Assembly: GCA_964247055.1 (NCBI GenBank)
Contig: OZ176050.1
Span: 3,844,001 to 3,908,000 of the forward strand
Direction: 5' to 3'
Source of the DNA: Paragordius varius
Taxonomy: Eukaryota; Animalia; Nematomorpha
Length of the DNA stretch: 64,000 nucleotides
Below, piece after piece: positions 44,735 through 59,366 of the stretch (positions within the stretch are counted from its first letter, which is position 1; each line of letters begins with the position of its first letter). The notes beneath the pieces are model-generated. The model had not been told where the DNA came from. It made no database searches and saw only the letters and a program-made list of their open reading frames with translations. Position numbers and translations under genes: made by a program.

Positions 44735-47700
44735 TTAGTTTTCACGGGATGACATATATTTCAAAATCTTGTCGTAAAGCTTCGGAGCGTCCAGTCCCCA
44801 CAAGAAATCAATATGATTGTACTTTTCATATTTGAAACTAGCTTTCAAACTTTGAATCCTTGGAATCAATCTTGAAACATCATCAGGACCTGCTAGCCAA
44901 TCCTCCTCTCCCCAAAACATTACGGTTGGCACATTGAACTTTTTTAATGGATATTCAGGTGGTGTACTCTATTGCATATAAATGAAAACACATCTAAGCA
45001 TTTGTCATAACTAGATCCAATATTTTGCGGGTATAATACTTATTAAATGGACGGTTTATACTTAGTCTATTAATTATATTTACTAATATATTTTGTATGA
45101 AATATTTTTTATCAATCATCACTAATTAACCAATTCAGATATATTTAATTATGTGAGAAATGAATTACTCCTATGAAAAATGCAAAAGGCTTACGCTTCC
45201 GTAGGTTAACAAATTTTTGATGGTTCCATAATCAAACTTTCGCAATTGATCGGCCGTTATTAGTTGCGAAAAATGAATAAAATTTTTAGTTGACGTTCCT
45301 GCGGGTGAATGGGCAGCATAGACGGGAACCATTTTCTATATATTTTAGATTTTTGAATTTATTCTGTTTAACTCAAGAAATTGTTGAAGGGCTTGAAACA
45401 GGTAAAAAACAGTAAATGAAGTGGTTGATGAAAAGTTAGGAAGCGGGCCGGTTCTGAAATTGAAATAAGTAAAATTAGCACCGACCTTGAGAAAATGTAG
45501 AAAACCAGGTCAAAACAGGTTCTCACAAAAATATCAGAGATCCAGAACTGGTTCCATGTGGTTCTGGTTTCAAACCCGGTGATTATAATAATAAAAAGAT
45601 CACAATATGATTTAGTTTTATTAATGAGCTAAGGGTAATAAAGAGGCATGAGGCAGCTAATTATATAATTAAAATACTTTATGGCCCTAACCAATTAGTT
45701 GTCCTTACATATAATTTATCTACAAATAATAATAATCGCTAAGCCTAAAACGACGCTTTCAAATATTTCTTTGCATATATATACCGGATCGAGATTCTTT
45801 TCGTTGAATCCAACCAGCACAAACAAACCGTTAATGCAAGCGAGAGAGAAATCGTTTGATGTACAAAACTTGGATCCAAACCATTGGACTATGGCTGTGT
45901 TGGGCATAAACTCCCCATGTCCAAACATATTGAACAAAACATCCATTGTATTAGAGAAGGGGGCTAACATACCCAACGGAGATTTTATGTTACCCAAAAA
46001 GGCAACTGGGGCCAACGCAAAAAACATTTTAATCTTTTGGGCCAAATTTTGATTTTCCGAAAACCCTGAAAATCCAACTAATGTGCCTTGGGAATGGCCG
46101 ACATAGAATAGTTGATCAACGCCGGTTTTCTCTAGCACATAATCAACCATGGCTGGGAGATCGTATTGAGCCATTTCTGAAAAACTAAACGTGCACATCT
46201 TTATACATTTTAATTTTGGCCAAATTGACGCCTTAAATTTTTTTTTGATTACATCAAATAGTTTTTGCATTTAAAATTAATTGCTAGATGTCAAATACCT
46301 TAAACTGCTATTTATGCACAGATGTTTGAAAGGGAAATTTAAATATGTTTTTTAAATGATGGTTTTAGAAAACTTTAAGGCATTACAAAATAAGTTGCAT
46401 TAATTATTTTAGCATCAACATCAATCATCCTGAAGTAATTACTGATAACTAATTAAATTTTTTTAAATAAGGTTTATTTCAAAAACCTAAAATCCCAAAA
46501 CGCAAGATTATCCGACGAGAGTTTAATATGAGATTTTGAGTAAACGTTTCCCCGTATGTTGCCAAGCCATACATCATAACCAGCATCATGTAATATAAAT
46601 GCTAAAATTAAACATTTTATATTATATAATCTTAAACTGTAGGAAAGTTGAAAAAATATGGTTTTACTTTGCATATAACCTAAAAGTATTTGATTAAATT
46701 ATTACATAAAATAAAATAAAAATCCTTTTTAAACCAAAAGATTGTGTTTTATTGTTCATGACCCAATCAGCTGAGGAACAAAGTAGCCCATGTTGCAAAT
46801 ATATGACATTTAATTTGTCTCTGTTCACTTTGTTAGGTATTCTGTGCATCGTAAGGATATAACCATCTTGGGTTGTTACCTTGTGTTCTTCGTACGGATA
46901 ATTCCGATACTCAATCAATTCTTTCTAAAATGATAAAAAATTAACTTTTTCATAACAAATTATAAAATAAAAATTATTAAAGAGGCATATAAAAAATAAA
47001 ATAATTAACTAAAAAAATGATATACACTTATGAACATATTAAGAACATGGAGATTTGGGTTTTAGCACTGTTATATAAGTGCTAACTTTTGCAATGGCTT
47101 CAATTTGTTCCATATTTATAGAAATATTTGATTCTAAACAGCCCTGGGACCCAAAGACCCAAATTTGAATCGGGGGACTGAAATGAATGTGTTGTATCCA
47201 ATCTTAAAAATGCGAGTGTAAGGTATTTAAAAATTTTAACCTTTTTTGCATATCATAAAAGAGAAAAACAGTTATATATCTTCTATTTTTCGAAATTGCT
47301 CAAAGCTTATTTTAGAATTTTGTAAAATAATTGATTATTTCTTAAAACTTTTTTCAATATAATTAGGATCACAAATCGTGCTATCGGGGAATTTAAAATA
47401 GGCAAGCTTTTTAGGCAAATAAAATTTTTTTTATTAAATCTAGAATTTCTTAATTGATGATATATTATAATGTTCAGAAATTTTTATTTATTAACAATTG
47501 TATTCAAGCAAATTTTAGAAGCTACGATTTATCAGCAATTGTATTCAAGCAAAATTTTAGATGCTCCTAATATTTAAAACTTGGATACAACATATTCCTT
47601 CCATTCCTTCGATTCAAACTAATACTTCCATTCAAATTGGGGTATCCCCCCAGACAATATTTAAATTGACATTTTTACAAAACTACTGAAAGAAACGGTT

Positions 47701-49458
47701 CCAATTTAAATGTATTAATAAGACAAAATATCTATATAAAATTAGTATTGGAAAAAAGTTCTATATCAAACTACTTGGACGCCATTTTTATTTTATGTCG
47801 CATTTATTTGATTCTAAAAATAAAGTTTGTTTATTAAAATCACATTTAAAATTGATTTAAAAAAGAAAATGGTATATTTTCCATTATTTTTATATTTAGC
47901 TTATGCACACATGCCAAGTTAACTAAATTTTTGCCTTTGAGTTTTAAATCTGAATATGTAATATCAAGTATAATTTAATAATTTTTTTATATTTCAATTC
48001 ATTAGGCCACAAAAAGCAAACTCTTGCCATGGTTTTATTTTTTTCATATTTTTTGAAATATATACTTTTAAACAAGCTTGGGCGAATCGAAGGACTAAAA
48101 TGAATGTTTTGTATCCAAGTGTTAAGGTGATACATGTTTAAAATCAAATTTTCATTTGGAATGGATTAAAACCATTATAATTTGTACTACATTATTTAAA
48201 ACTAGATTACTTATTTGGATAAACCGGAAGGTAAAAATTATGCCAAGATGATATGTCATTAGGTTAATAAAAAACAATGCCAAAACCACTTTTTTGTATA
48301 TATATTAATGTTAAATTAATAAAAAATTAACTTTAATTTTAGCGTTATAACTAAAAAACACGATATTTTGCTAATATGTTGCAGAACAAATATGGCAAAT
48401 AGTCTGATATGAAAGTAAAAATTTTTTTTATCACGCCACCCTAAATTTTATTTAGATTTTTTGAATTGTAGGAGAGAAGCATAAATTTGAATCTGGAACG
48501 GTCTCCACCAATATTTAATAATATTAATTTTATTCTGGTTTACGGTCACTAGTTATCCCAATTTAGATCGAAGTGTTAATTCAGAACATTAACATCTTTT
48601 GGAAAAATTTGGAAAATATTGTGGCAGAAAAAGCCTTTAGATTTTATTCCATTCATATTTAACACCTCATTACCTTTTAGTCATTTTTTAAAGGGCTATT
48701 TCATCTAAGTGTTTAGGAAATAAAAAATATGTATTCGCTTTCGCATTCAAACAAATATCAAGTGCAAAAAATGTTATGATTACTCATCTCATACTTTTAG
48801 ATGTCAATTTTTTTATATCTAGAAAAATTTTCCCAAATAATAAATAACAAAATTTATTTACTTACTATTTAACGGTCGGATATTTTTTGAAAAGGCTTAC
48901 TTGCACAACTGAGGGCTGTCTAAATTTTAGACTCACTGGAAGATATACAATATTTTTACCATATATGTAGGACTTTAATGATAAAATATCATTTTATGGT
49001 CAAAATGATTTTTAATATTATATTTTATAAGAAAGTGGGAATTTAATTATCTACCTTAAAATGTATCCTATAAAAAATTAAAGGTAATGCAGCATCAAAA
49101 AGGGTTCCATAAAAATCAATTTGCAAATAAAACTTGATGGCCCCAATTATTTATGTAAATCACCAATATAAATATGAATATTATGATTAATTTGATAAAG
49201 TAGAATATACAACAACATTATTTATATTGTGGTAATGTGGTAAATCCCGACTTTATTTAAAAAATTAATAAAAATCCGCATACCACATTCATTTTGATTT
49301 CAGGAACAGCACCGCTTAGAATAAGCTCCGCCATTTTAACATCCGATGAATTGGCTGATAATTTATTATTGTAGACATCATCAGCATACTTATAAATATT
49401 TTCCAAAGATGCAGTATAAATAGAAGTGCCTACAATTATTTTATCAGAATTATACCAT
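44735..49458 (-). CDS. LIPA: Lysosomal acid lipase / gastric lipase family, ~397 aa, 8 coding exons
   Basis: Exons 49458-49456 (ATG only), 49429-49390, 49354-49284, 46924-46735, 46601-46487, 46184-45785, 45335-45195, 44968-44735. Motifs PEIKMNV|KELIEY, LQHGLLCSSADW, DVWLGNIRGN, GHSQG (Ser), EDWLA (Asp), NHIDF (His). The first two small exons are inferred; the symbol marks the family, not proven orthology. Confidence 0.9.
45387..45579. mobile_element. hAT-like MITE (GAACC family) in a lipase intron
   Basis: AAGGGCTTGAAACAGG ... GGTTCTGGTTTCAAACCCGG; related to 1695-1817. Confidence 0.5.
47623..48121 (+). mobile_element. piggyBac-like MITE family 1, diverged, in a lipase intron
   Basis: ACTTCCATTCAAATTGGGGTATC ... 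GTATCCAAGTG|TTAA. Further end fragments at ~47145-47205 and ~47575-47618. Confidence 0.7.
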
Positions 49459-49627
49459 CACTGAATTTAGTTGTATAGGAAAATATTATGAAAATTAAAA
49501 TGATATTTGAAAACATTTTTTAAAAAAAGAATAAATAAATTTTAAATATATTTTTAAATATATATATAATGTAAAAACATTTGTATTTATGTATGCGCAT
49601 GTATATCATATGTATTAAAATTCAAAT
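49459..49627. promoter_or_regulatory. Putative bidirectional promoter between the lipase and LSD1-like genes
   Basis: Only 169 bp separate the two divergent ATGs; AT-rich, with one TATGCGCATG motif at ~49592-49601. Function is inferred from geometry. Confidence 0.5.
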
Positions 49628-51451
49628 ATGCCCACTCCCGATTCTGATATTGAGATTGTTGAATCATTTGATATTCCATCTCTGCCGAGAAAGAATGTTA
49701 TAATTATTGGAACCTCGCTGTCTGGTATATTTACAGCCAAATACTTATCATCCAATGAATACAATATAACCTTTATTGACGACAGCAATATAAATCAAAA
49801 TATTTTTGACCTACATCCCATTTTGAAAGATGACTTGGATATTCTAAAACACTTTATAGATTCAAATCCTATAACAAATATATGTTGCCCAATATTTGAG
49901 GGTCGACATACCAAAATACCTAAAAACAAATGTCAAGTTTTCACAAATGAATTTAATTCTTTGTTGCACAATATATTTGATTTGGTAAATAAATTGAATC
50001 CAGATACATTAGATAGAACTGTTTCGATTGGTGAGTATCTTGATCTAATTATTAATATGCATGAAAAGTATTTAAAAGAAGAGCAAATTGTTTTTTTAAA
50101 TGAAAAGATTGCATATCAAGAAAAATTGATTGAATGCTTAGATTCTTTGGACACTTCGTTTAAAGAAATCGAGTTACCTTCCGATTGTGTAAATCTAATT
50201 AGTTCGGATGATGATATGCTAGAAGAAGATCAAAATTTGTTTACGCGAGAAACTATAAAATCAATCAGGTCCAAAATTACCACCATGGATTCCCTATCCC
50301 CATGCCAATGTTACATGGGTTTTCGCGATCGAAATCTATTAGATTGGATAGCTGCTAATTTGGAATTAAATTTGGGAGGATTATCCCTCTACTCTCTACC
50401 GGTTACCTTTATTACACATATAATGGATTCGTTGACTCTACAATCTTCTACAGAATGCTATTTAAATGGTAACGAAATACTAAGGATTAGGCTAGACTTA
50501 TTGCGTAATTATCAAATATTACAGAATATAAAAGTAACCAAAGTATCATACGGCTCCCTGGACGGTGCCATCGAAATTGAATGTGTTAAGCAACCAAACT
50601 CTTTTTGTAATGAAAATTTTAACCAAACTTTGAACATGTCAATAGACAATGATAACACCCCACCAAGTTTTACGCTAAAATGTCACGAATTAATTTGGGC
50701 TTTACCGCTAAACAAATTATTTAGGGCTGAAAATGATACCCATTTATCTACTGAAGGGATTAGTTTGTGCGATTGGCTTCCTACCGTTACCTTTGAACCT
50801 AGATTACCCTCATCTTGGTTACCTGAAGCATTAAACGTTTTGACAGGAACCGTATTATACGTTACATTAGCTTTTGACCATACGTTTTGGCCTGACGACA
50901 TTACAATGTTTGGGTATAATGGTTGTTCGACCCCTGAAAGTCGGGGGGAATTTTTTCTGTTTCTCATTAGCCGGGGTAAATTACCGGCCAATACCTTAAT
51001 CACAAAACCGCATGAAATTATCGCAGACTCCAAATTAATTAACTCGAATGACATTGCTCAAACCTGTAATAATGATGGTGTTTATACTTATCATTTTTTA
51101 ACTGGTGTAGCGTCTGGGGATGCTGCAAAATCATTGATTCGACTATCCGATAATATTTTAGTTGATCGTTGTTTGAGCATTCTTAAGCGCTTATTTGGAA
51201 ATACTGTAGGTACCTATGTAACTTATTACATCTCCCAAACATCTTCATACATATCAAAACAGGATGAAAAGCCTGAAATTATATTGTTTCCACCGATACA
51301 ATCGCTGTATAAAAATAATATTGGTTATCGTTCAAATGTTAGATTTGTTGGGGAATATAACATATCACATTGCAACAAGCTAACTCGTGATATACAAAGT
51401 GGTATAATGCAAGCTACAAAAATTAAACAAACTTATACTACAAATAAATAA
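49628..51451 (+). CDS. Intronless LSD1/KDM1A-like amine-oxidase-fold protein, 607 aa, lacking SWIRM and with degenerate catalytic motifs
   Basis: Colinear with remembered LSD1 motifs: CPIFEG..IPKNK..EFNSLL, VSIGEYL..HEKYLKEEQ (Tower start), RDRNLLDW..NLE, FEPRLP, FDHTFW..MFGY..ESRGEFFLF, DRCLSILKRLFG, FVGEY. An in-frame stop lies just upstream of the ATG. Confidence 0.85.
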   Translation: MPTPDSDIEIVESFDIPSLPRKNVIIIGTSLSGIFTAKYLSSNEYNITFIDDSNINQNIFDLHPILKDDLDILKHFIDSNPITNICCPIFEGRHTKIPKNKCQVFTNEFNSLLHNIFDLVNKLNPDTLDRTVSIGEYLDLIINMHEKYLKEEQIVFLNEKIAYQEKLIECLDSLDTSFKEIELPSDCVNLISSDDDMLEEDQNLFTRETIKSIRSKITTMDSLSPCQCYMGFRDRNLLDWIAANLELNLGGLSLYSLPVTFITHIMDSLTLQSSTECYLNGNEILRIRLDLLRNYQILQNIKVTKVSYGSLDGAIEIECVKQPNSFCNENFNQTLNMSIDNDNTPPSFTLKCHELIWALPLNKLFRAENDTHLSTEGISLCDWLPTVTFEPRLPSSWLPEALNVLTGTVLYVTLAFDHTFWPDDITMFGYNGCSTPESRGEFFLFLISRGKLPANTLITKPHEIIADSKLINSNDIAQTCNNDGVYTYHFLTGVASGDAAKSLIRLSDNILVDRCLSILKRLFGNTVGTYVTYYISQTSSYISKQDEKPEIILFPPIQSLYKNNIGYRSNVRFVGEYNISHCNKLTRDIQSGIMQATKIKQTYTTNK

Positions 51452-51929
51452 TTTATCGAATTTTTATATCTAATTACGTTAAGAGTGTTGGGCTTTAGAA
51501 TTGGCCCCTTTCTTAGTTGCATTCAACTATTGAACCTTTATAGGTTAAAAATAACATATTTTTTAGATTTGCACAATACCTATTCTACACTTGGACTATT
51601 ATAGCTGTGAATTGATAAATAATGAAAACTACAATTTTGTACGTTGTTAATAAATTAAAAAACAATGCAATTAAATTTCAATAAAAAAATGAAATGGGTA
51701 GAAACGGCATCATAAAAATATTTTCAATATTGAGTAATTGACAAGTTTAAATATTATTGATTTGTATGTTTTATCCATTACATATATCAACCCTTTTCAA
51801 CGCATTATTACAACATAGATAAACAACACGGCTACCATATGAAAAAGAGCGCTTTTACAAACACTACCATATAAATATTTTATTCTAAAATTTAAAATGA
51901 CATCAGAATTGAAAGTAATTTATTTTATT

Positions 51930-52422
51930 ATGATGGTTAATAAATAATAATACAATATAATTATAATTTACAGGATATTAAGGATGAAAGAATATTGATG
52001 CAGCAAATCGATTTTTATTTAAGGAATATTTGCGATCAAGAAACTATTGGAAAGAATTCTTCACTGGAACATAACAAATTATTGTCGCTTTTGTTTGAAA
52101 AATATAAAATTTTACAAAATCGTTTAGAGCGTCAAGTTACCGAAACGGATAAACTAATTGAAATTTCCAGTGATTTGAGCAAAAAAATAATTAACATCCA
52201 GACAAAAAAATCTTTTGTAATAAATTTATAATTTGTAGGCTGATAAATCTATTCAAACTGATAATAAATCTTATCCGTTAAAAAATGGCTTCAAAACAAC
52301 AAATTCATACGAAAACCCATATCCGAACATTTCAAACAAAAGATCACATGATTCTGAAAAAGTTAAAATAAAATTTATTTTAGATTGATTACAAGAAGTT
52401 TTCTAAATACGGAATTTTATGA
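51930..52422 (+). CDS. Small putative coiled-coil protein, ~136 aa, 4 exons
   Basis: Exons 51930-51935, 51974-52216, 52239-52361, 52384-52422; introns of 38, 22 and 22 nt. Heptad-like LFEKYKILQNRLERQVTETDKLIEISSDL. The 5' and 3' exons are less certain. Confidence 0.55.
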
Positions 52423-52471: not shown

Positions 52472-53006
52472 TCATATTAATTCTCCAGTTTTTTCCAATA
52501 AAAACTGTCTGCATAATTCCGATAAATTATCAATTTTTAGCAAATCCGAAGCCTTGTATATTTCTTTAATTTCCTCAATTGTTCCCGTAAACTCTGCCGT
52601 ACACATATATTCCAAAATTTTCTATAATTATCTATGCAATACTTGAAAAATTGGTAAGGTCACTGCATCATTTGGTAATGTTATTTCCGAAACATGCCTC
52701 ATGTTAACTCTATCATACATGTTCATAAAATAATCATCAAAAAAGACGCTATGTGCTCCTAGTATAATTGAATGAGCTCTTACCGATTTATCGCCTATTT
52801 TTGTTATTATAGAAAATATGTAAAATAATCATACCGATTTTGACAGTTACATCGGTAAATTGATTCTTGAGCCAGGCCGATTTTGCGAATCGTCCTAAAG
52901 CAGCAAAATGACTTTCCTGTTCGTTGTTAAGTTCTGTACTTATATCATAAAAAATTTGATTCTTTTTAATGTTATCATTAGATGCCACAGGGATAATAGC
53001 TGACAT
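52472..53006 (-). CDS. BTB/POZ-domain-only protein, ~157 aa, 3 exons
   Basis: Exons 53006-52835, 52794-52643, 52621-52472; introns of 40 and 21 nt. FTDVTVKIGDKSVRAHSIILGAHSVFF...ILEYMCT...KASDLLKIDNLSELCRQFL is a typical BTB. Confidence 0.85.
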
Positions 53007-57587: not shown

Positions 57588-59366
57588 ATGACGAACAAAA
57601 GGCATACAAGGGATTCAGGCTGTTGCAGCCTAAATCTGCTTAAATATTTTATGTTTACTTATAATTTCTTCTTTTGGGTATTGATTACATAATATTTAAA
57701 GCTAATTAGCATTTGTTTGCTTGGAGTTTCTTTATGGGTACTTATTTCCAAACATCCATATTTACCATTGCTTAACGCAAATCAATTTTTTATCGCAACA
57801 TGTTTGATGATTGGTGTGGGAGTTATAATTGTTTTTGTTGGATCTATCGGATGTGTGTCTATTTGGAAGGAAGATAGATGCTTACTTAAATTAGTAAAAC
57901 AATGTTTAATATTTAGTACATATTTTTGCTTTTTATAATATTTGTTTGTCAATCCTTATCGGGTGTCTTTGCTTTCCTATACCATTCCAAAATGCATAAG
58001 GAGCTCGATATTCAATTACATGAGACATTTCTCAAGGCATTCAATATTGATGACAGGAAAACAAAAGCAATAGATTTGTTGCAGAAAAAGGTATTGGTTT
58101 TCAACGCTATGATAAACACTGTTTTTTTCATTTTTATGCTTAATAATTTTTGTATTTTATCAAATTATATATTTTTCCATTAATATAAACTTTAGCTAAA
58201 AAATTATCTAATATAATCTTGCCTCATATTTTTTATAAGCTTTCTATTTTTTTCAAATATCCAGTTTAAATGTTGTGGAATAAAGTCTTTTGAGGATTGG
58301 AAACAAAGTTTATGGATTAAGAATTTGACTCATATCCCACCATACAATAACACGGTGCCTGATTCATGCTGCATTTCCCCCAGCCAATATTGTGGGGTCC
58401 GGGATCACCCCTCAAATATTTACTATGATGTAAGGAAACATTTTAAAAAATATACCATTTGCACCAACCTCAAATTCATTCTAAAATAAATAAGTTTTGT
58501 AAGATTAAAAGTAGAAAATGAAATTGTTTAAAATATATAATACCGAAAAAAAAATAAACTATGCCATAAAGGTATATTTCTTAGTAATGATGATATATAT
58601 TAGTCCGAAAACACATAATTTATTTTTAGGGTAAATATGAATTGTTTAAAGGCGAATTTGAATTGTTCTAGGGCTAATTGTTCAAGAGGGAATATTAATT
58701 GTTCAAGGGCGAATATAAATTAAATGGTATATTGCATGTGTTAAAAAAGGTTTGAACATCGCATTAGATTCTTAATGGGTAAACTAATAAAAAAGTTTAT
58801 AATAAAATATATTTTTAGAAAAAATTAACCATATTTTATGATATTTACTACATTTTTATGATTAAAGTAATAAACTATTTTACATTAATTCCTTTACTCG
58901 TATTGCAACATTTTAAATTTCATGTTTTACGCTTTTTCTATTTAATCTTTTCTGTAATGTTTATTTTATTGTAAATTAAAATTATTCATTTTGTATATTA
59001 AATATGTTGCGGGAGACACCCATTGATAATTTAGTTTTGGATTCAAAGGATATTAAGTTATTGAGCTTGATACAATACAAAATAAAAAGTGAGATTTTAC
59101 AAACAACATAATATTTTAATATATAATTTATCGATTTTACCGAAATGTGTTATATGTTTTCAAATTATTTGGCTACTAAGCAAATACCTATTGTTCTCTT
59201 TATAATAGCTATCTTTGGTAGGAATAATTTTCAATGGTTAGTTCAAAAGACATTTGATTATAACTTGCGCTTTAATTATTTAATGCGCGATACTCGCTAT
59301 TAGCCTTTAGACCCATTTTTAAATATATTATCATGAAATTTCGTATCTAATGGTTTGTTTTGTTTT

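What the first reader, a model, noticed from the sequence alone, without database searches (positions are those of the whole stretch)
49628..51451. LSD1/KDM1A pseudo-demethylase: Tower kept, catalysis and SWIRM lost, intronless
Seen: an intact 607-codon ORF colinear with LSD1. The FAD motif GxGxxG reads GTSLSG (aa 28-33), the GGR and GAMVV segments are missing, the position of catalytic K661 (GNLNKVVLCFD) reads GTVLYVTLAFD (Y411, nt 50858-50860), and the W..GSYSY and TVHGA motifs are gone. A shortened Tower-like helical insert remains (~50057-50311). There is no SWIRM domain and no intron, whereas every other gene here has introns. Known: the Tower binds CoREST, K661 supports FAD-dependent demethylation, and LSD1 has scaffold functions. 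Inference: a retro-derived, non-catalytic LSD1 paralogue acting as scaffold or dominant-negative CoREST partner, or the sole degenerate LSD1 of a reduced genome.
Basis: partly seen in the sequence, partly recalled or inferred. Interest (0 to 1): 0.8.

Follow-up and report, generated by a model that had tools for sequence, protein, structure and literature searches.

The report
Catalytically dead LSD1 copy, hairworm
An intronless gene in a horsehair-worm genome encodes a copy of the chromatin enzyme LSD1 that keeps the enzyme's overall fold and its protruding "Tower" but has lost the parts that hold the flavin cofactor and do the chemistry, so it most likely acts as a non-enzymatic binding protein.

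Summary
Window 49628-51451 (+) is an intact 607-codon ORF, collinear with human LSD1 residues 275-833 in both sequence and predicted fold, Tower included.

What is lost:
- the middle glycine of GxGxxG (it reads GTSLSG)
- the whole RVGGR loop
- DLGA
- N660/K661 (now L/Y)
- W751
- most of the C-terminal GEHT...TVHGA motif

No SWIRM is detectable anywhere in the window.

New here: the genome is a horsehair worm's. The nearest relative by far is the canonical LSD1 of the hairworm Gordionus, which has a SWIRM, intact FAD motifs, K661 and 15 introns. Thirteen of those introns fall in the part homologous to this ORF, and the ORF has none of them. It starts just after the SWIRM, as a 5'-truncated processed copy would.

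It is only 32% identical to its nearest relative yet carries no stop; neutral decay to that level gave 21 or more stops in every simulation. It was therefore kept by selection.

Best reading: a retro-derived, non-catalytic LSD1 pseudoenzyme. Three things are untested: expression, whether a canonical LSD1 exists in this genome, and what binds the Tower. A 2023 survey found no CoREST in hairworms.

The scan's earlier notes hold no other record of this gene.

The parts
49628..51451 (+). Intact intronless ORF of 607 codons plus stop: the LSD1-derived protein (called Q607 in this report)
49694..49780 (+). Beta-alpha-beta dinucleotide-fold remnant (aa 23-51). GxGxxG reads G28-T-S30-L-S-G33; D51 stands at the E308 position.
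   Evidence: (pLDDT 88-91)
49784..49798 (+). Site where the R-V-G-G-R..T loop (human 310-319) is deleted; aa 53-57 read S-N-I-N-Q.
50027..50293 (+). Tower-like helical hairpin (predicted helices aa 134-182 and 196-222). It is about as short as in the Gordionus LSD1. Its base is 47-50% identical to Gordionus; its tip is not conserved.
50855..50860 (+). L410-Y411 at the positions of N660 and the catalytic K661
50987..51091 (+). 35-aa insert (aa 454-488) found in no other LSD1 and predicted with low confidence. It begins 3 residues after the position of Gordionus intron 13.
51344..51391 (+). Degenerate C-terminal FAD motif (aa 573-588): F-V-G-E-Y-N ... K-L-T-R-D in place of F-A-G-E-H-T ... A-T-V-H-G-A. 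G and E are kept; H802, T803, T810, V811, G813 and A814 are lost.

Best explanation
This is a processed, 5'-truncated copy of the hairworm LSD1 gene. It starts just behind the SWIRM domain and has no introns. It has lost flavin binding and the catalytic lysine, yet it has been kept as an open, folded protein by purifying selection. That makes it a natural LSD1 pseudoenzyme.

Shown:
- descent from the hairworm LSD1 lineage
- loss of the SWIRM, the FAD motifs and K661
- retention of the amine-oxidase-like fold and the Tower hairpin
- absence of all 13 ancestral intron positions
- an intact frame despite about 68% amino-acid divergence

Inferred:
- It arose by reverse transcription of an mRNA.
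- A canonical LSD1 still exists elsewhere in this genome.
- The protein acts without chemistry, using the Tower base and the conserved C-terminal lobe to bind a partner of the canonical enzyme. That partner could be a CoREST-type ELM2-SANT protein if hairworms have one, or another Tower or cleft ligand. It would then either compete with the active LSD1 or bring its partners to chromatin without demethylation.
For: Descent:
- An exhaustive HMMER search of 1.84 billion representatives gives Gordionus LSD1 as best hit (E 1.3e-35, next 9e-19). All 50 hits appear to be LSD1 homologues: Pfam confirmed the top eight, and most of the rest carry LSD1 signature motifs.
- Q607 shares lineage-specific motifs with Gordionus (FGYxGCSTPESRGEFFLF, LVDRCLxILKRxFGN) and 25 exclusive residues, against 14 or fewer with any other LSD1.
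- The ML tree makes the two sisters (SH-aLRT 91). The Q607 end branch is 8.05, against 2.34 for Gordionus and a median of 0.33.

Dead enzyme:
- Of the columns at least 90% conserved in 38 non-hairworm LSD1s, Q607 keeps 15/40 in AOD-N and 45/76 in AOD-C. Gordionus keeps 28/40 and 61/76.
- At FAD-contact positions Q607 keeps 4/19 and 5/21; Gordionus keeps 12/19 and 15/21 (the residue lists are from my memory of the LSD1 structures).
- Pfam sees only a partial Amino_oxidase match (aa 386-528) and no NAD_binding_8 match, which all eight canonical LSD1s scanned have.

Fold and Tower kept.

Retro origin:
- The Gordionus gene has 16 exons. Thirteen of its introns lie in the homologous part, and Q607 has none of them.
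- Earlier notes report that this genome shrinks introns while keeping their positions.
- The ORF starts 15 residues before the beta-alpha-beta fold, with a stop 12 nt upstream of the ATG.
- No SWIRM lies within 49.6 kb upstream.
- The window shares no other gene with the flanks of the Gordionus LSD1 locus.

Selection:
- P(no stop in 607 codons) is 9e-21 by composition.
- The other five frames have 19-68 stops.
- Simulated neutral decay to 35% identity gives a mean of 34 stops, and at least 21 in all 300 runs.

Possible transcription: a run of only 24 Mb of contigs holds 69% of the ORF's words.
Against:
- No canonical LSD1 of this species could be looked for, so 'paralogue' is inferred.
- No poly(A) remnant or target-site duplication can be recognised in the AT-rich flanks (read).
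- The synteny test covers only 10 kb on each side of the Gordionus gene.
- The Tower as a whole is not significantly better conserved than the rest (35% against 28-34%, Fisher p 0.59), and its tip is not conserved.
- RCOR was not found in Nematomorpha in a 2023 survey.
- The model is only of moderate confidence (pLDDT 67).
- Both hairworm sequences are long branches with skewed composition, so their sister grouping could be inflated.
Confidence: 0.6

Rival explanations
1. It is the only LSD1-family gene of this hairworm: either the orthologue of Gordionus LSD1 that lost its introns, SWIRM and catalysis in place, or an orphaned retrocopy whose parent was later lost. The animal would then live without LSD1 demethylase activity and keep only the scaffold.
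For: - No other LSD1-like sequence lies in the 64-kb window.
- The scan's notes on this genome mention no LSD1, KDM1A, SWIRM or CoREST, though such blanks mean little.
- The hairworm LSD1 lineage is already fast-evolving: Gordionus is 38% identical to mammal, where beetle to mammal is 67%. Its substrate cleft is diverged (5/22 kept), which suggests loosened constraint in the phylum.
Against: - Gordionus, a relative, keeps a canonical FAD-competent LSD1.
- Loss of all 13 introns at once, in a genome that otherwise keeps intron positions, points to a copy rather than to the original locus.
- The flanking genes do not match those of the Gordionus locus.
- The end branch is 3.4 times longer than that of Gordionus, which is typical of a redundant duplicate.
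Confidence: 0.22
2. It is a gene relic that lost function only recently, or an untranscribed ORF. The open frame reflects past selection, not present selection.
For: - No RNA evidence was obtained.
- No gene model or fragment of it exists among 15 billion public proteins.
- About a fifth of the model (126 of 607 residues) is predicted with pLDDT below 50.
Against: - There are 607 codons without a stop or frameshift in 33% GC sequence (P 9e-21), while the other frames carry 19-68 stops.
- The core strands and helices are still predicted with confidence and match LSD1 at Z 26.
- A small run (24 Mb of contigs) holds 69% of the ORF's words, more than expected from low-coverage DNA.
Confidence: 0.08
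3. It is still a flavoenzyme that binds FAD in an unusual way and oxidises some amine substrate.
For: - The beta-alpha-beta core, G285, G290, an acidic residue at the end of beta-2, and G800-E801 are kept.
- The language-model look-alikes are all flavin amine oxidases.
Against: - The middle Gly of GxGxxG is Ser.
- The R-x-G-G-R loop is deleted.
- DLGA, N660, K661, W751, H802, T803, T810, V811, G813 and A814 are all replaced.
- Pfam's NAD_binding_8 no longer matches.
Confidence: 0.05

Closest known systems
Gordionus sp. m RMFG-2023 LSD1 (XP_065322303.1, 720 aa; longer model CAK9304484.1, 868 aa)
   Same: It is the nearest relative (E 1.3e-35, 32-36% identity). The two share a short Tower, lineage-specific motifs and the same C-terminal end. 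Both have a strongly diverged H3-tail cleft.
   Different: The Gordionus gene has 15 introns, a SWIRM domain (Pfam E 8e-10), an intact GxGxxG, RVGGR, N-K661, W751 and GEHT..TV.GA. The window ORF has none of these.
Human LSD1/KDM1A (for example PDB 2IW5, 2V1D, 6VYP)
   Same: The window protein shares the amine-oxidase-like fold interrupted by a Tower hairpin. It aligns collinearly over residues 275-833 (Z 26) and hits only LSD1 among solved structures by sequence.
   Different: The window protein has no N-terminal region or SWIRM. Its FAD-binding and catalytic residues are lost. Its Tower is shorter by roughly 12-16 residues per helix (human helix lengths from memory), and it carries a 35-aa insert. 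Identity is 29%.
Catalytically inactive LSD1 mutants (K661A and similar) and the demethylase-independent scaffold role of LSD1
   Same: These experiments show that LSD1 can act through its partners without chemistry (PMC10444793, PMC9803847, PMC5896174; titles and abstracts seen). The window protein looks like a natural version of such a mutant.
   Different: Those are engineered point mutants that still bind FAD and keep the SWIRM. This is a naturally evolved gene with wholesale loss of the cofactor site and of the SWIRM.
LSD2/KDM1B and polyamine oxidases
   Same: They share the flavin amine oxidase fold (Z 20-23).
   Different: They have no Tower, and only about 380 residues align. Foldseek E is 1e-12, against 3e-26 for LSD1.
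Other natural pseudo-demethylases, such as JARID2 and Epe1 of the JmjC class (from my own knowledge)
   Same: They are chromatin proteins descended from demethylases that act as scaffolds or regulators without catalysis.
   Different: They belong to an unrelated fold and cofactor class (JmjC/Fe-2OG). I found no described natural dead member of the LSD1 class.

Membership tests
LSD1/KDM1A histone demethylase | Flavin amine-oxidase-like domain homologous to LSD1 | tested here: met
   phmmer E 1.6e-25 to human LSD1 only. Foldseek E 3e-26. VIA-align Z 26 over residues 18-607.
LSD1/KDM1A histone demethylase | Tower: a helical hairpin inserted in the oxidase domain | tested here: met
   Query 86-255 aligns with the human Tower region. 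Predicted helices are 134-182 and 196-222, mostly at pLDDT 80-94 and lower at the tip. About 100 more residues align with LSD1 than with LSD2. The Tower is as short as in Gordionus.
LSD1/KDM1A histone demethylase | SWIRM domain N-terminal to the oxidase domain | tested here: not met
   Pfam finds none. tblastn with the Gordionus SWIRM finds none in the window. The SWIRM profile's best E is 0.4 in six frames, and its control on Gordionus gives 4e-10.
LSD1/KDM1A histone demethylase | FAD-binding motifs: GxGxxG, R-x-G-G-R, D-L-G-A, C-terminal G-E-H-T...T-V-H-G-A | tested here: not met
   The motifs read GTSLSG; RVGGR is deleted; DLHP; GEYN...LTRD. FAD-position retention is 4/19 and 5/21, against 12/19 and 15/21 in Gordionus. 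There is no NAD_binding_8 match.
LSD1/KDM1A histone demethylase | Catalytic lysine K661, with N660 | tested here: not met
   L410-Y411 in all alignments.
LSD1/KDM1A histone demethylase | H3K4me1/2 demethylase activity | not testable with these tools
   This needs an enzyme assay.
LSD1/KDM1A histone demethylase | Binding of a CoREST/RCOR linker-SANT2 by the Tower | not tested
   No tool-given RCOR sequence was available, and the genome could not be searched. A 2023 survey found no RCOR in Nematomorpha.
Processed retrogene | Lacks the introns of the parental gene | tested here: met
   It has 0 of the 13 intron positions of the Gordionus gene and no hidden micro-intron compatible with frame and homology. 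The comparison is with the orthologue in a relative, not with the parent itself.
Processed retrogene | An intron-bearing parent gene elsewhere in the same genome | not testable with these tools
   Only this 64-kb window of the genome is readable. The findings searches were blank.
Processed retrogene | Poly(A) remnant and target-site duplications | tested here: inconclusive
   None is recognisable by eye in the AT-rich flanks. At this divergence they would be erased.
Pseudoenzyme | Catalytic residues lost, but the protein kept by selection | tested here: met
   The losses are listed above. The open frame has P 9e-21, and neutral decay gave at least 21 stops in 300 of 300 runs. No dN/dS was possible.
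Pseudoenzyme | Expressed as RNA and protein | tested here: inconclusive
A 24-Mb run of unknown kind holds 69% of the ORF's words.

The most novel reading that the evidence does not exclude
This degenerate copy is the only LSD1-family protein left in this hairworm. The animal would then have given up LSD1 demethylase chemistry altogether and kept, under selection, only the Tower-bearing scaffold. That would be a natural separation of LSD1's scaffold function from its enzymatic function.
Probability: 0.18. Interest if true: 0.8.

Novelty: new variant of a known kind. Interest (0 to 1): 0.55.

Why it matters
LSD1 is a drug target, and how much of its biology needs demethylation rather than scaffolding is an active question. 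So far it has been addressed with engineered K661A-type mutants and inhibitors.

This gene is a naturally evolved LSD1 descendant, preserved by selection, that has discarded the cofactor site, the catalytic lysine and the SWIRM but kept the fold and the Tower. It shows which parts of LSD1 are worth keeping without chemistry: the Tower base and two blocks of the C-terminal lobe.

I found no description of a natural dead LSD1 in the literature searched.

It also adds to what is known of hairworm chromatin genes. A 2023 survey listed LSD1 as not found in Nematomorpha, whereas Gordionus has one, with a very unusual substrate cleft.

Tried and rejected
1. Read evidence. However, my offline sandbox scripts that read the whole window file did include them.
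2. Word-index protein search with the ORF: blank. The exhaustive search was needed.
3. Exact look-up: the ORF's protein is in no public collection.
4. Search for a canonical LSD1 or CoREST of this genome in the scan's notes: blank. This is not informative.
5. Other hairworm LSD1s. A word search with Gordionus LSD1 found none; the next hits are arthropods at 33-35% identity.
6. Synteny. Beyond the LSD1-like ORF itself, the window shares nothing with the Gordionus LSD1 locus plus or minus 10 kb. The neighbouring 581-aa amine oxidase of Gordionus is not the orthologue. A wider test failed because the window's neighbours (acid lipase, BTB-like, tetraspanin, VWA) are split genes of multigene families, which cannot be handed to the search by reference.
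7. Hidden in-frame micro-introns: rejected.
8. Exonised intron. The 35-aa insert starts 3 residues after the position of Gordionus intron 13, and a GGTAAAT lies 2 nt off that position. With 13 intron positions in about 600 residues, the chance of such proximity is about 15%, and no acceptor fits, so I do not claim it (and reading).
9. Horizontal origin from a host: rejected, since the gene groups with the hairworm LSD1.
10. 'The Tower is the best-kept part': not significant.
11. The bacterial-type promoter and terminator scan is irrelevant here.
12. Atlas look-alikes only repeat the superfamily.
Full report
**What is there**

Window 49628-51451 (+) is an ATG-to-TAA open frame of 607 codons. 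It is by far the longest stop-free run in the 64-kb window; the next is 280 codons. The window is 27% G+C.

A TAA lies in frame 12 nt upstream of the ATG, with no AG between them (read). An upstream exon could therefore only be joined inside the ORF.

The C-terminus (...SGIMQATKIKQTYTTNK) ends at the same alignment position as the Gordionus and other LSD1 proteins. The 3' end is therefore complete.

**It is LSD1-like, Tower included**

- phmmer against all PDB sequences returns only human LSD1/KDM1A (E 1.6e-25), in four collinear stretches. The best one (query 86-255) runs through the Tower region.
- Pfam recognises only a partial Amino_oxidase match (aa 386-528, E 8e-7) and no NAD_binding_8 or SWIRM. 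The eight canonical LSD1 proteins scanned all match NAD_binding_8.
- An AlphaFold2 model built on a 40-sequence alignment has mean pLDDT 67 and pTM 0.66. The beta-alpha-beta unit (aa 21-50, pLDDT 88-91) and two long antiparallel helices (134-182 and 196-222, mostly pLDDT 80-94, lower at the tip) are predicted well.
- Foldseek ranks 32 LSD1 entries first (E about 3e-26, TM 0.55-0.58) and LSD2 far behind (1e-12).
- VIA-align superposes model residues 18-607 on human LSD1 275-833 (Z 26, about 485 residues). LSD2 and polyamine oxidases align over about 380 residues, that is, the oxidase body without the Tower.

**The catalytic apparatus is gone**

In alignments of 10 and 40 LSD1 sequences:

| Canonical LSD1 | This ORF |
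|---|---|
| GxGxxG | G28-T-S30-L-S-G33 (middle Gly is Ser) |
| E308-A-R310 | D-D-S |
| R-V-G-G-R...T loop | deleted |
| D-L-G-A | D-L-H-P |
| 14-residue KQ...KI segment | deleted |
| N660-K661 | L410-Y411 |
| W751 | Y |
| W-A-R-G-S-Y-S-Y | shortened to T-S-S-Y |
| F-A-G-E-H-T...A-T-V-H-G-A | F-V-G-E-Y-N...K-L-T-R-D |

I took the columns that are at least 90% conserved in 38 LSD1 proteins from cnidarians to mammals and counted how many each hairworm protein keeps:

| Region | This ORF | Gordionus LSD1 |
|---|---|---|
| N-terminal oxidase part | 15/40 | 28/40 |
| C-terminal oxidase part | 45/76 | 61/76 |
| SWIRM | 0/13 | 9/13 |

At positions I recall as FAD contacts, the ORF keeps 4/19 and 5/21. 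Gordionus keeps 12/19 and 15/21 (those residue lists come from memory, not from a tool).

What is kept: G285, G290, an acidic residue at the end of beta-2, and G800-E801. Canonical FAD binding and amine oxidation are therefore very unlikely.

**Where it comes from**

The scan's earlier notes describe this genome as a very AT-rich horsehair worm, related to but distinct from Gordionus. They report 22-29-nt micro-introns at conserved intron positions. I read four such micro-introns in this window.

An exhaustive HMMER search of 1.84 billion representative proteins gives 50 hits. All appear to be LSD1 homologues: Pfam confirmed the top eight, and most of the rest carry LSD1 signature motifs. The best hit (E 1.3e-35; the next is 9e-19) is 'lysine-specific histone demethylase 1A-like' of Gordionus sp. 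m RMFG-2023 (XP_065322303.1; longer model CAK9304484.1, 868 aa).

That protein has a SWIRM (Pfam E 8e-10), an intact GxGxxG, RVGGR, N-K661, W751 and the C-terminal motif. It and the ORF share the following:

- motifs found in no other hit (FGYxGCSTPESRGEFFLF)
- 25 exclusive residues, against 14 or fewer for any other sequence
- an equally short Tower

An ML tree makes them sisters (SH-aLRT 91). The end branches are 8.05 for the ORF and 2.34 for Gordionus, against a median of 0.33. Both are long, compositionally skewed branches, so the tree alone would be weak; the motifs and E-values agree with it.

Identity figures:

| Pair | Identity |
|---|---|
| ORF vs Gordionus | 32% |
| ORF vs mammal | 29% |
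| Gordionus vs mammal | 38% |
| beetle vs mammal | 67% |

The hairworm LSD1 lineage is thus already fast-evolving, and the ORF much more so.

**Intronless, truncated copy**

I reconstructed the Gordionus gene on its chromosome (locus L001:10001-30917). It has 16 exons and 15 introns of 44-9833 nt. Thirteen intron positions fall in the part homologous to the ORF, and the ORF is continuous across all of them.

A scan for AT-rich GT..AG micro-introns gives one in-frame candidate (50505-50534). It encodes sequence homologous to the conserved GLDIKLNTAV block, so it is not an intron.

The ORF starts 15 residues before the beta-alpha-beta fold, just behind where the SWIRM and linker would be. No SWIRM-like coding sequence exists in the window:

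- tblastn with the Gordionus protein matches only 49697-51202.
- A SWIRM profile finds nothing in six frames (best E 0.4).
- The same profile built without Gordionus finds the two Gordionus SWIRM exons at 4e-10 and 4e-4.

Earlier notes report that this genome keeps intron positions, so simultaneous loss of 13 introns plus 5' truncation is the signature of a processed, reverse-transcribed copy.

The flanks do not resemble the Gordionus LSD1 locus, whose neighbour is a 581-aa amine oxidase gene. That comparison reaches only 10 kb on each side.

**Kept by selection**

- By its own composition, the chance of 607 codons without a stop is 9e-21.
- The other five frames of the same stretch hold 19-68 stops.
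- Random substitution towards the window's base composition, continued until protein identity falls to 35%, produced a mean of 34 stops and never fewer than 21 in 300 runs.

The frame has therefore been protected through most of its divergence. A very recent loss of function cannot be excluded.

The conservation that remains against Gordionus is concentrated in four places:

- the base of the first Tower helix (aa 136-180, 47%)
- the base of the second helix and the RDRNLLDW block (211-255, about 50%)
- two C-terminal blocks (406-450 at 50-63%; 496-540 at 53-67%)

The Tower tip and the cofactor loops are not conserved. Between canonical LSD1s the Tower is much less conserved than the oxidase body (about 48% against 75%). 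Between the ORF and Gordionus the two are equal (35% against 28-34%). This fits relaxation of the oxidase body rather than of the Tower, but the difference is not significant (Fisher p 0.59).

**Function**

The best-supported reading is a pseudoenzyme that works by binding. A 2023 survey found no RCOR, LSD1 or LSD2 in Nematomorpha (PMC10721905). The Gordionus annotation now shows an LSD1, so that blank may reflect missing data, but no RCOR has been shown.

The H3-tail cleft is diverged in both hairworm proteins (5/22 recalled positions kept in each). A histone-tail reader role is therefore not supported either.

**Expression**

This is open. Five runs of unrecorded type hold the ORF. One has only 24 Mb of contigs yet holds 69% of the ORF's words, which would be unexpected for low-coverage DNA and hints at RNA. 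That is an inference, not evidence.

**Paralogue or sole copy**

This could not be decided, because the rest of the genome is out of reach of these tools. The retro signature, the non-matching flanks, the asymmetric branch and the canonical gene in a related genus favour a paralogue (about 0.6). A sole, orphaned copy remains possible (about 0.2).

**Literature**

Searches for LSD1 with 'pseudoenzyme' and for KDM1A with 'retrogene' returned nothing on a natural dead LSD1. The demethylase-independent scaffold role of LSD1 is known from engineered mutants (PMC10444793, PMC9803847, PMC5896174).

No sequence here was taken for human.

Noticed in passing
L001:10001-30917 (Gordionus sp. m, OX940787.2:21685954-21706870): The canonical Gordionus LSD1 keeps FAD binding and K661 but has a strongly diverged substrate cleft: D555E, D556L, H564Y and Y761T, with only 5 of 22 recalled cleft positions kept. 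It also has a roughly 100-aa insert between the SWIRM and the oxidase domain, and long inserts inside the oxidase domain. It is only 38% identical to mammalian LSD1, where beetle to mammal is 67%. Its substrate may differ from H3K4me1/2.
   Followed up: partly
L001:32391-39258 (-): A 581-aa amine oxidase gene lies tail to tail beside the Gordionus LSD1. It is not LSD1-like and is not the orthologue of the window ORF.
   Followed up: partly
PMC10721905 against the Gordionus annotation: A 2023 survey lists LSD1, LSD2 and RCOR as not found in Nematomorpha. The Gordionus annotation now holds an LSD1 with a SWIRM. Whether hairworms have RCOR is still open.
   Followed up: partly
window 50987-51091, with 50973-50981: The 35-aa insert unique to this ORF begins 3 residues after the position of Gordionus intron 13 (phase 0). 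A GGGGTAAAT, a donor-like site, lies 2 nt off that position. This could be an exonised intron remnant or a coincidence (about 15% by chance).
   Followed up: partly
window 51898-52370 (+): A separate small coiled-coil gene seems to start about 450 nt after the ORF's stop. It has an ATG at 51898, a candidate 58-nt intron at 51916-51973 and a candidate 22-nt micro-intron at 52217-52238 (GTAATAAATTTATAATTTGTAG). No family was found.
   Followed up: no
window 49203-49460 (-): An exon-like open stretch of 66 codons with higher G+C lies on the opposite strand, only 170-400 nt upstream of the ORF's ATG. It has no Pfam match. If it is a real gene, the ORF may share a short bidirectional promoter region with it.
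   Followed up: no
window 44735-46918 (-): A multi-exon acid-lipase-like (alpha/beta hydrolase) gene is the next gene upstream. A BTB-like gene (52472-53006, -) and a tetraspanin (57717-58489, +) lie downstream. All are split by introns.
   Followed up: partly
   Followed up: no
run X3: A run with only 24 Mb of contigs holds 69% of the ORF's sampled words. The larger runs (152-244 Mb) hold 64-85%. Such enrichment would fit an RNA library, but the run's type is not on record.
   Followed up: no
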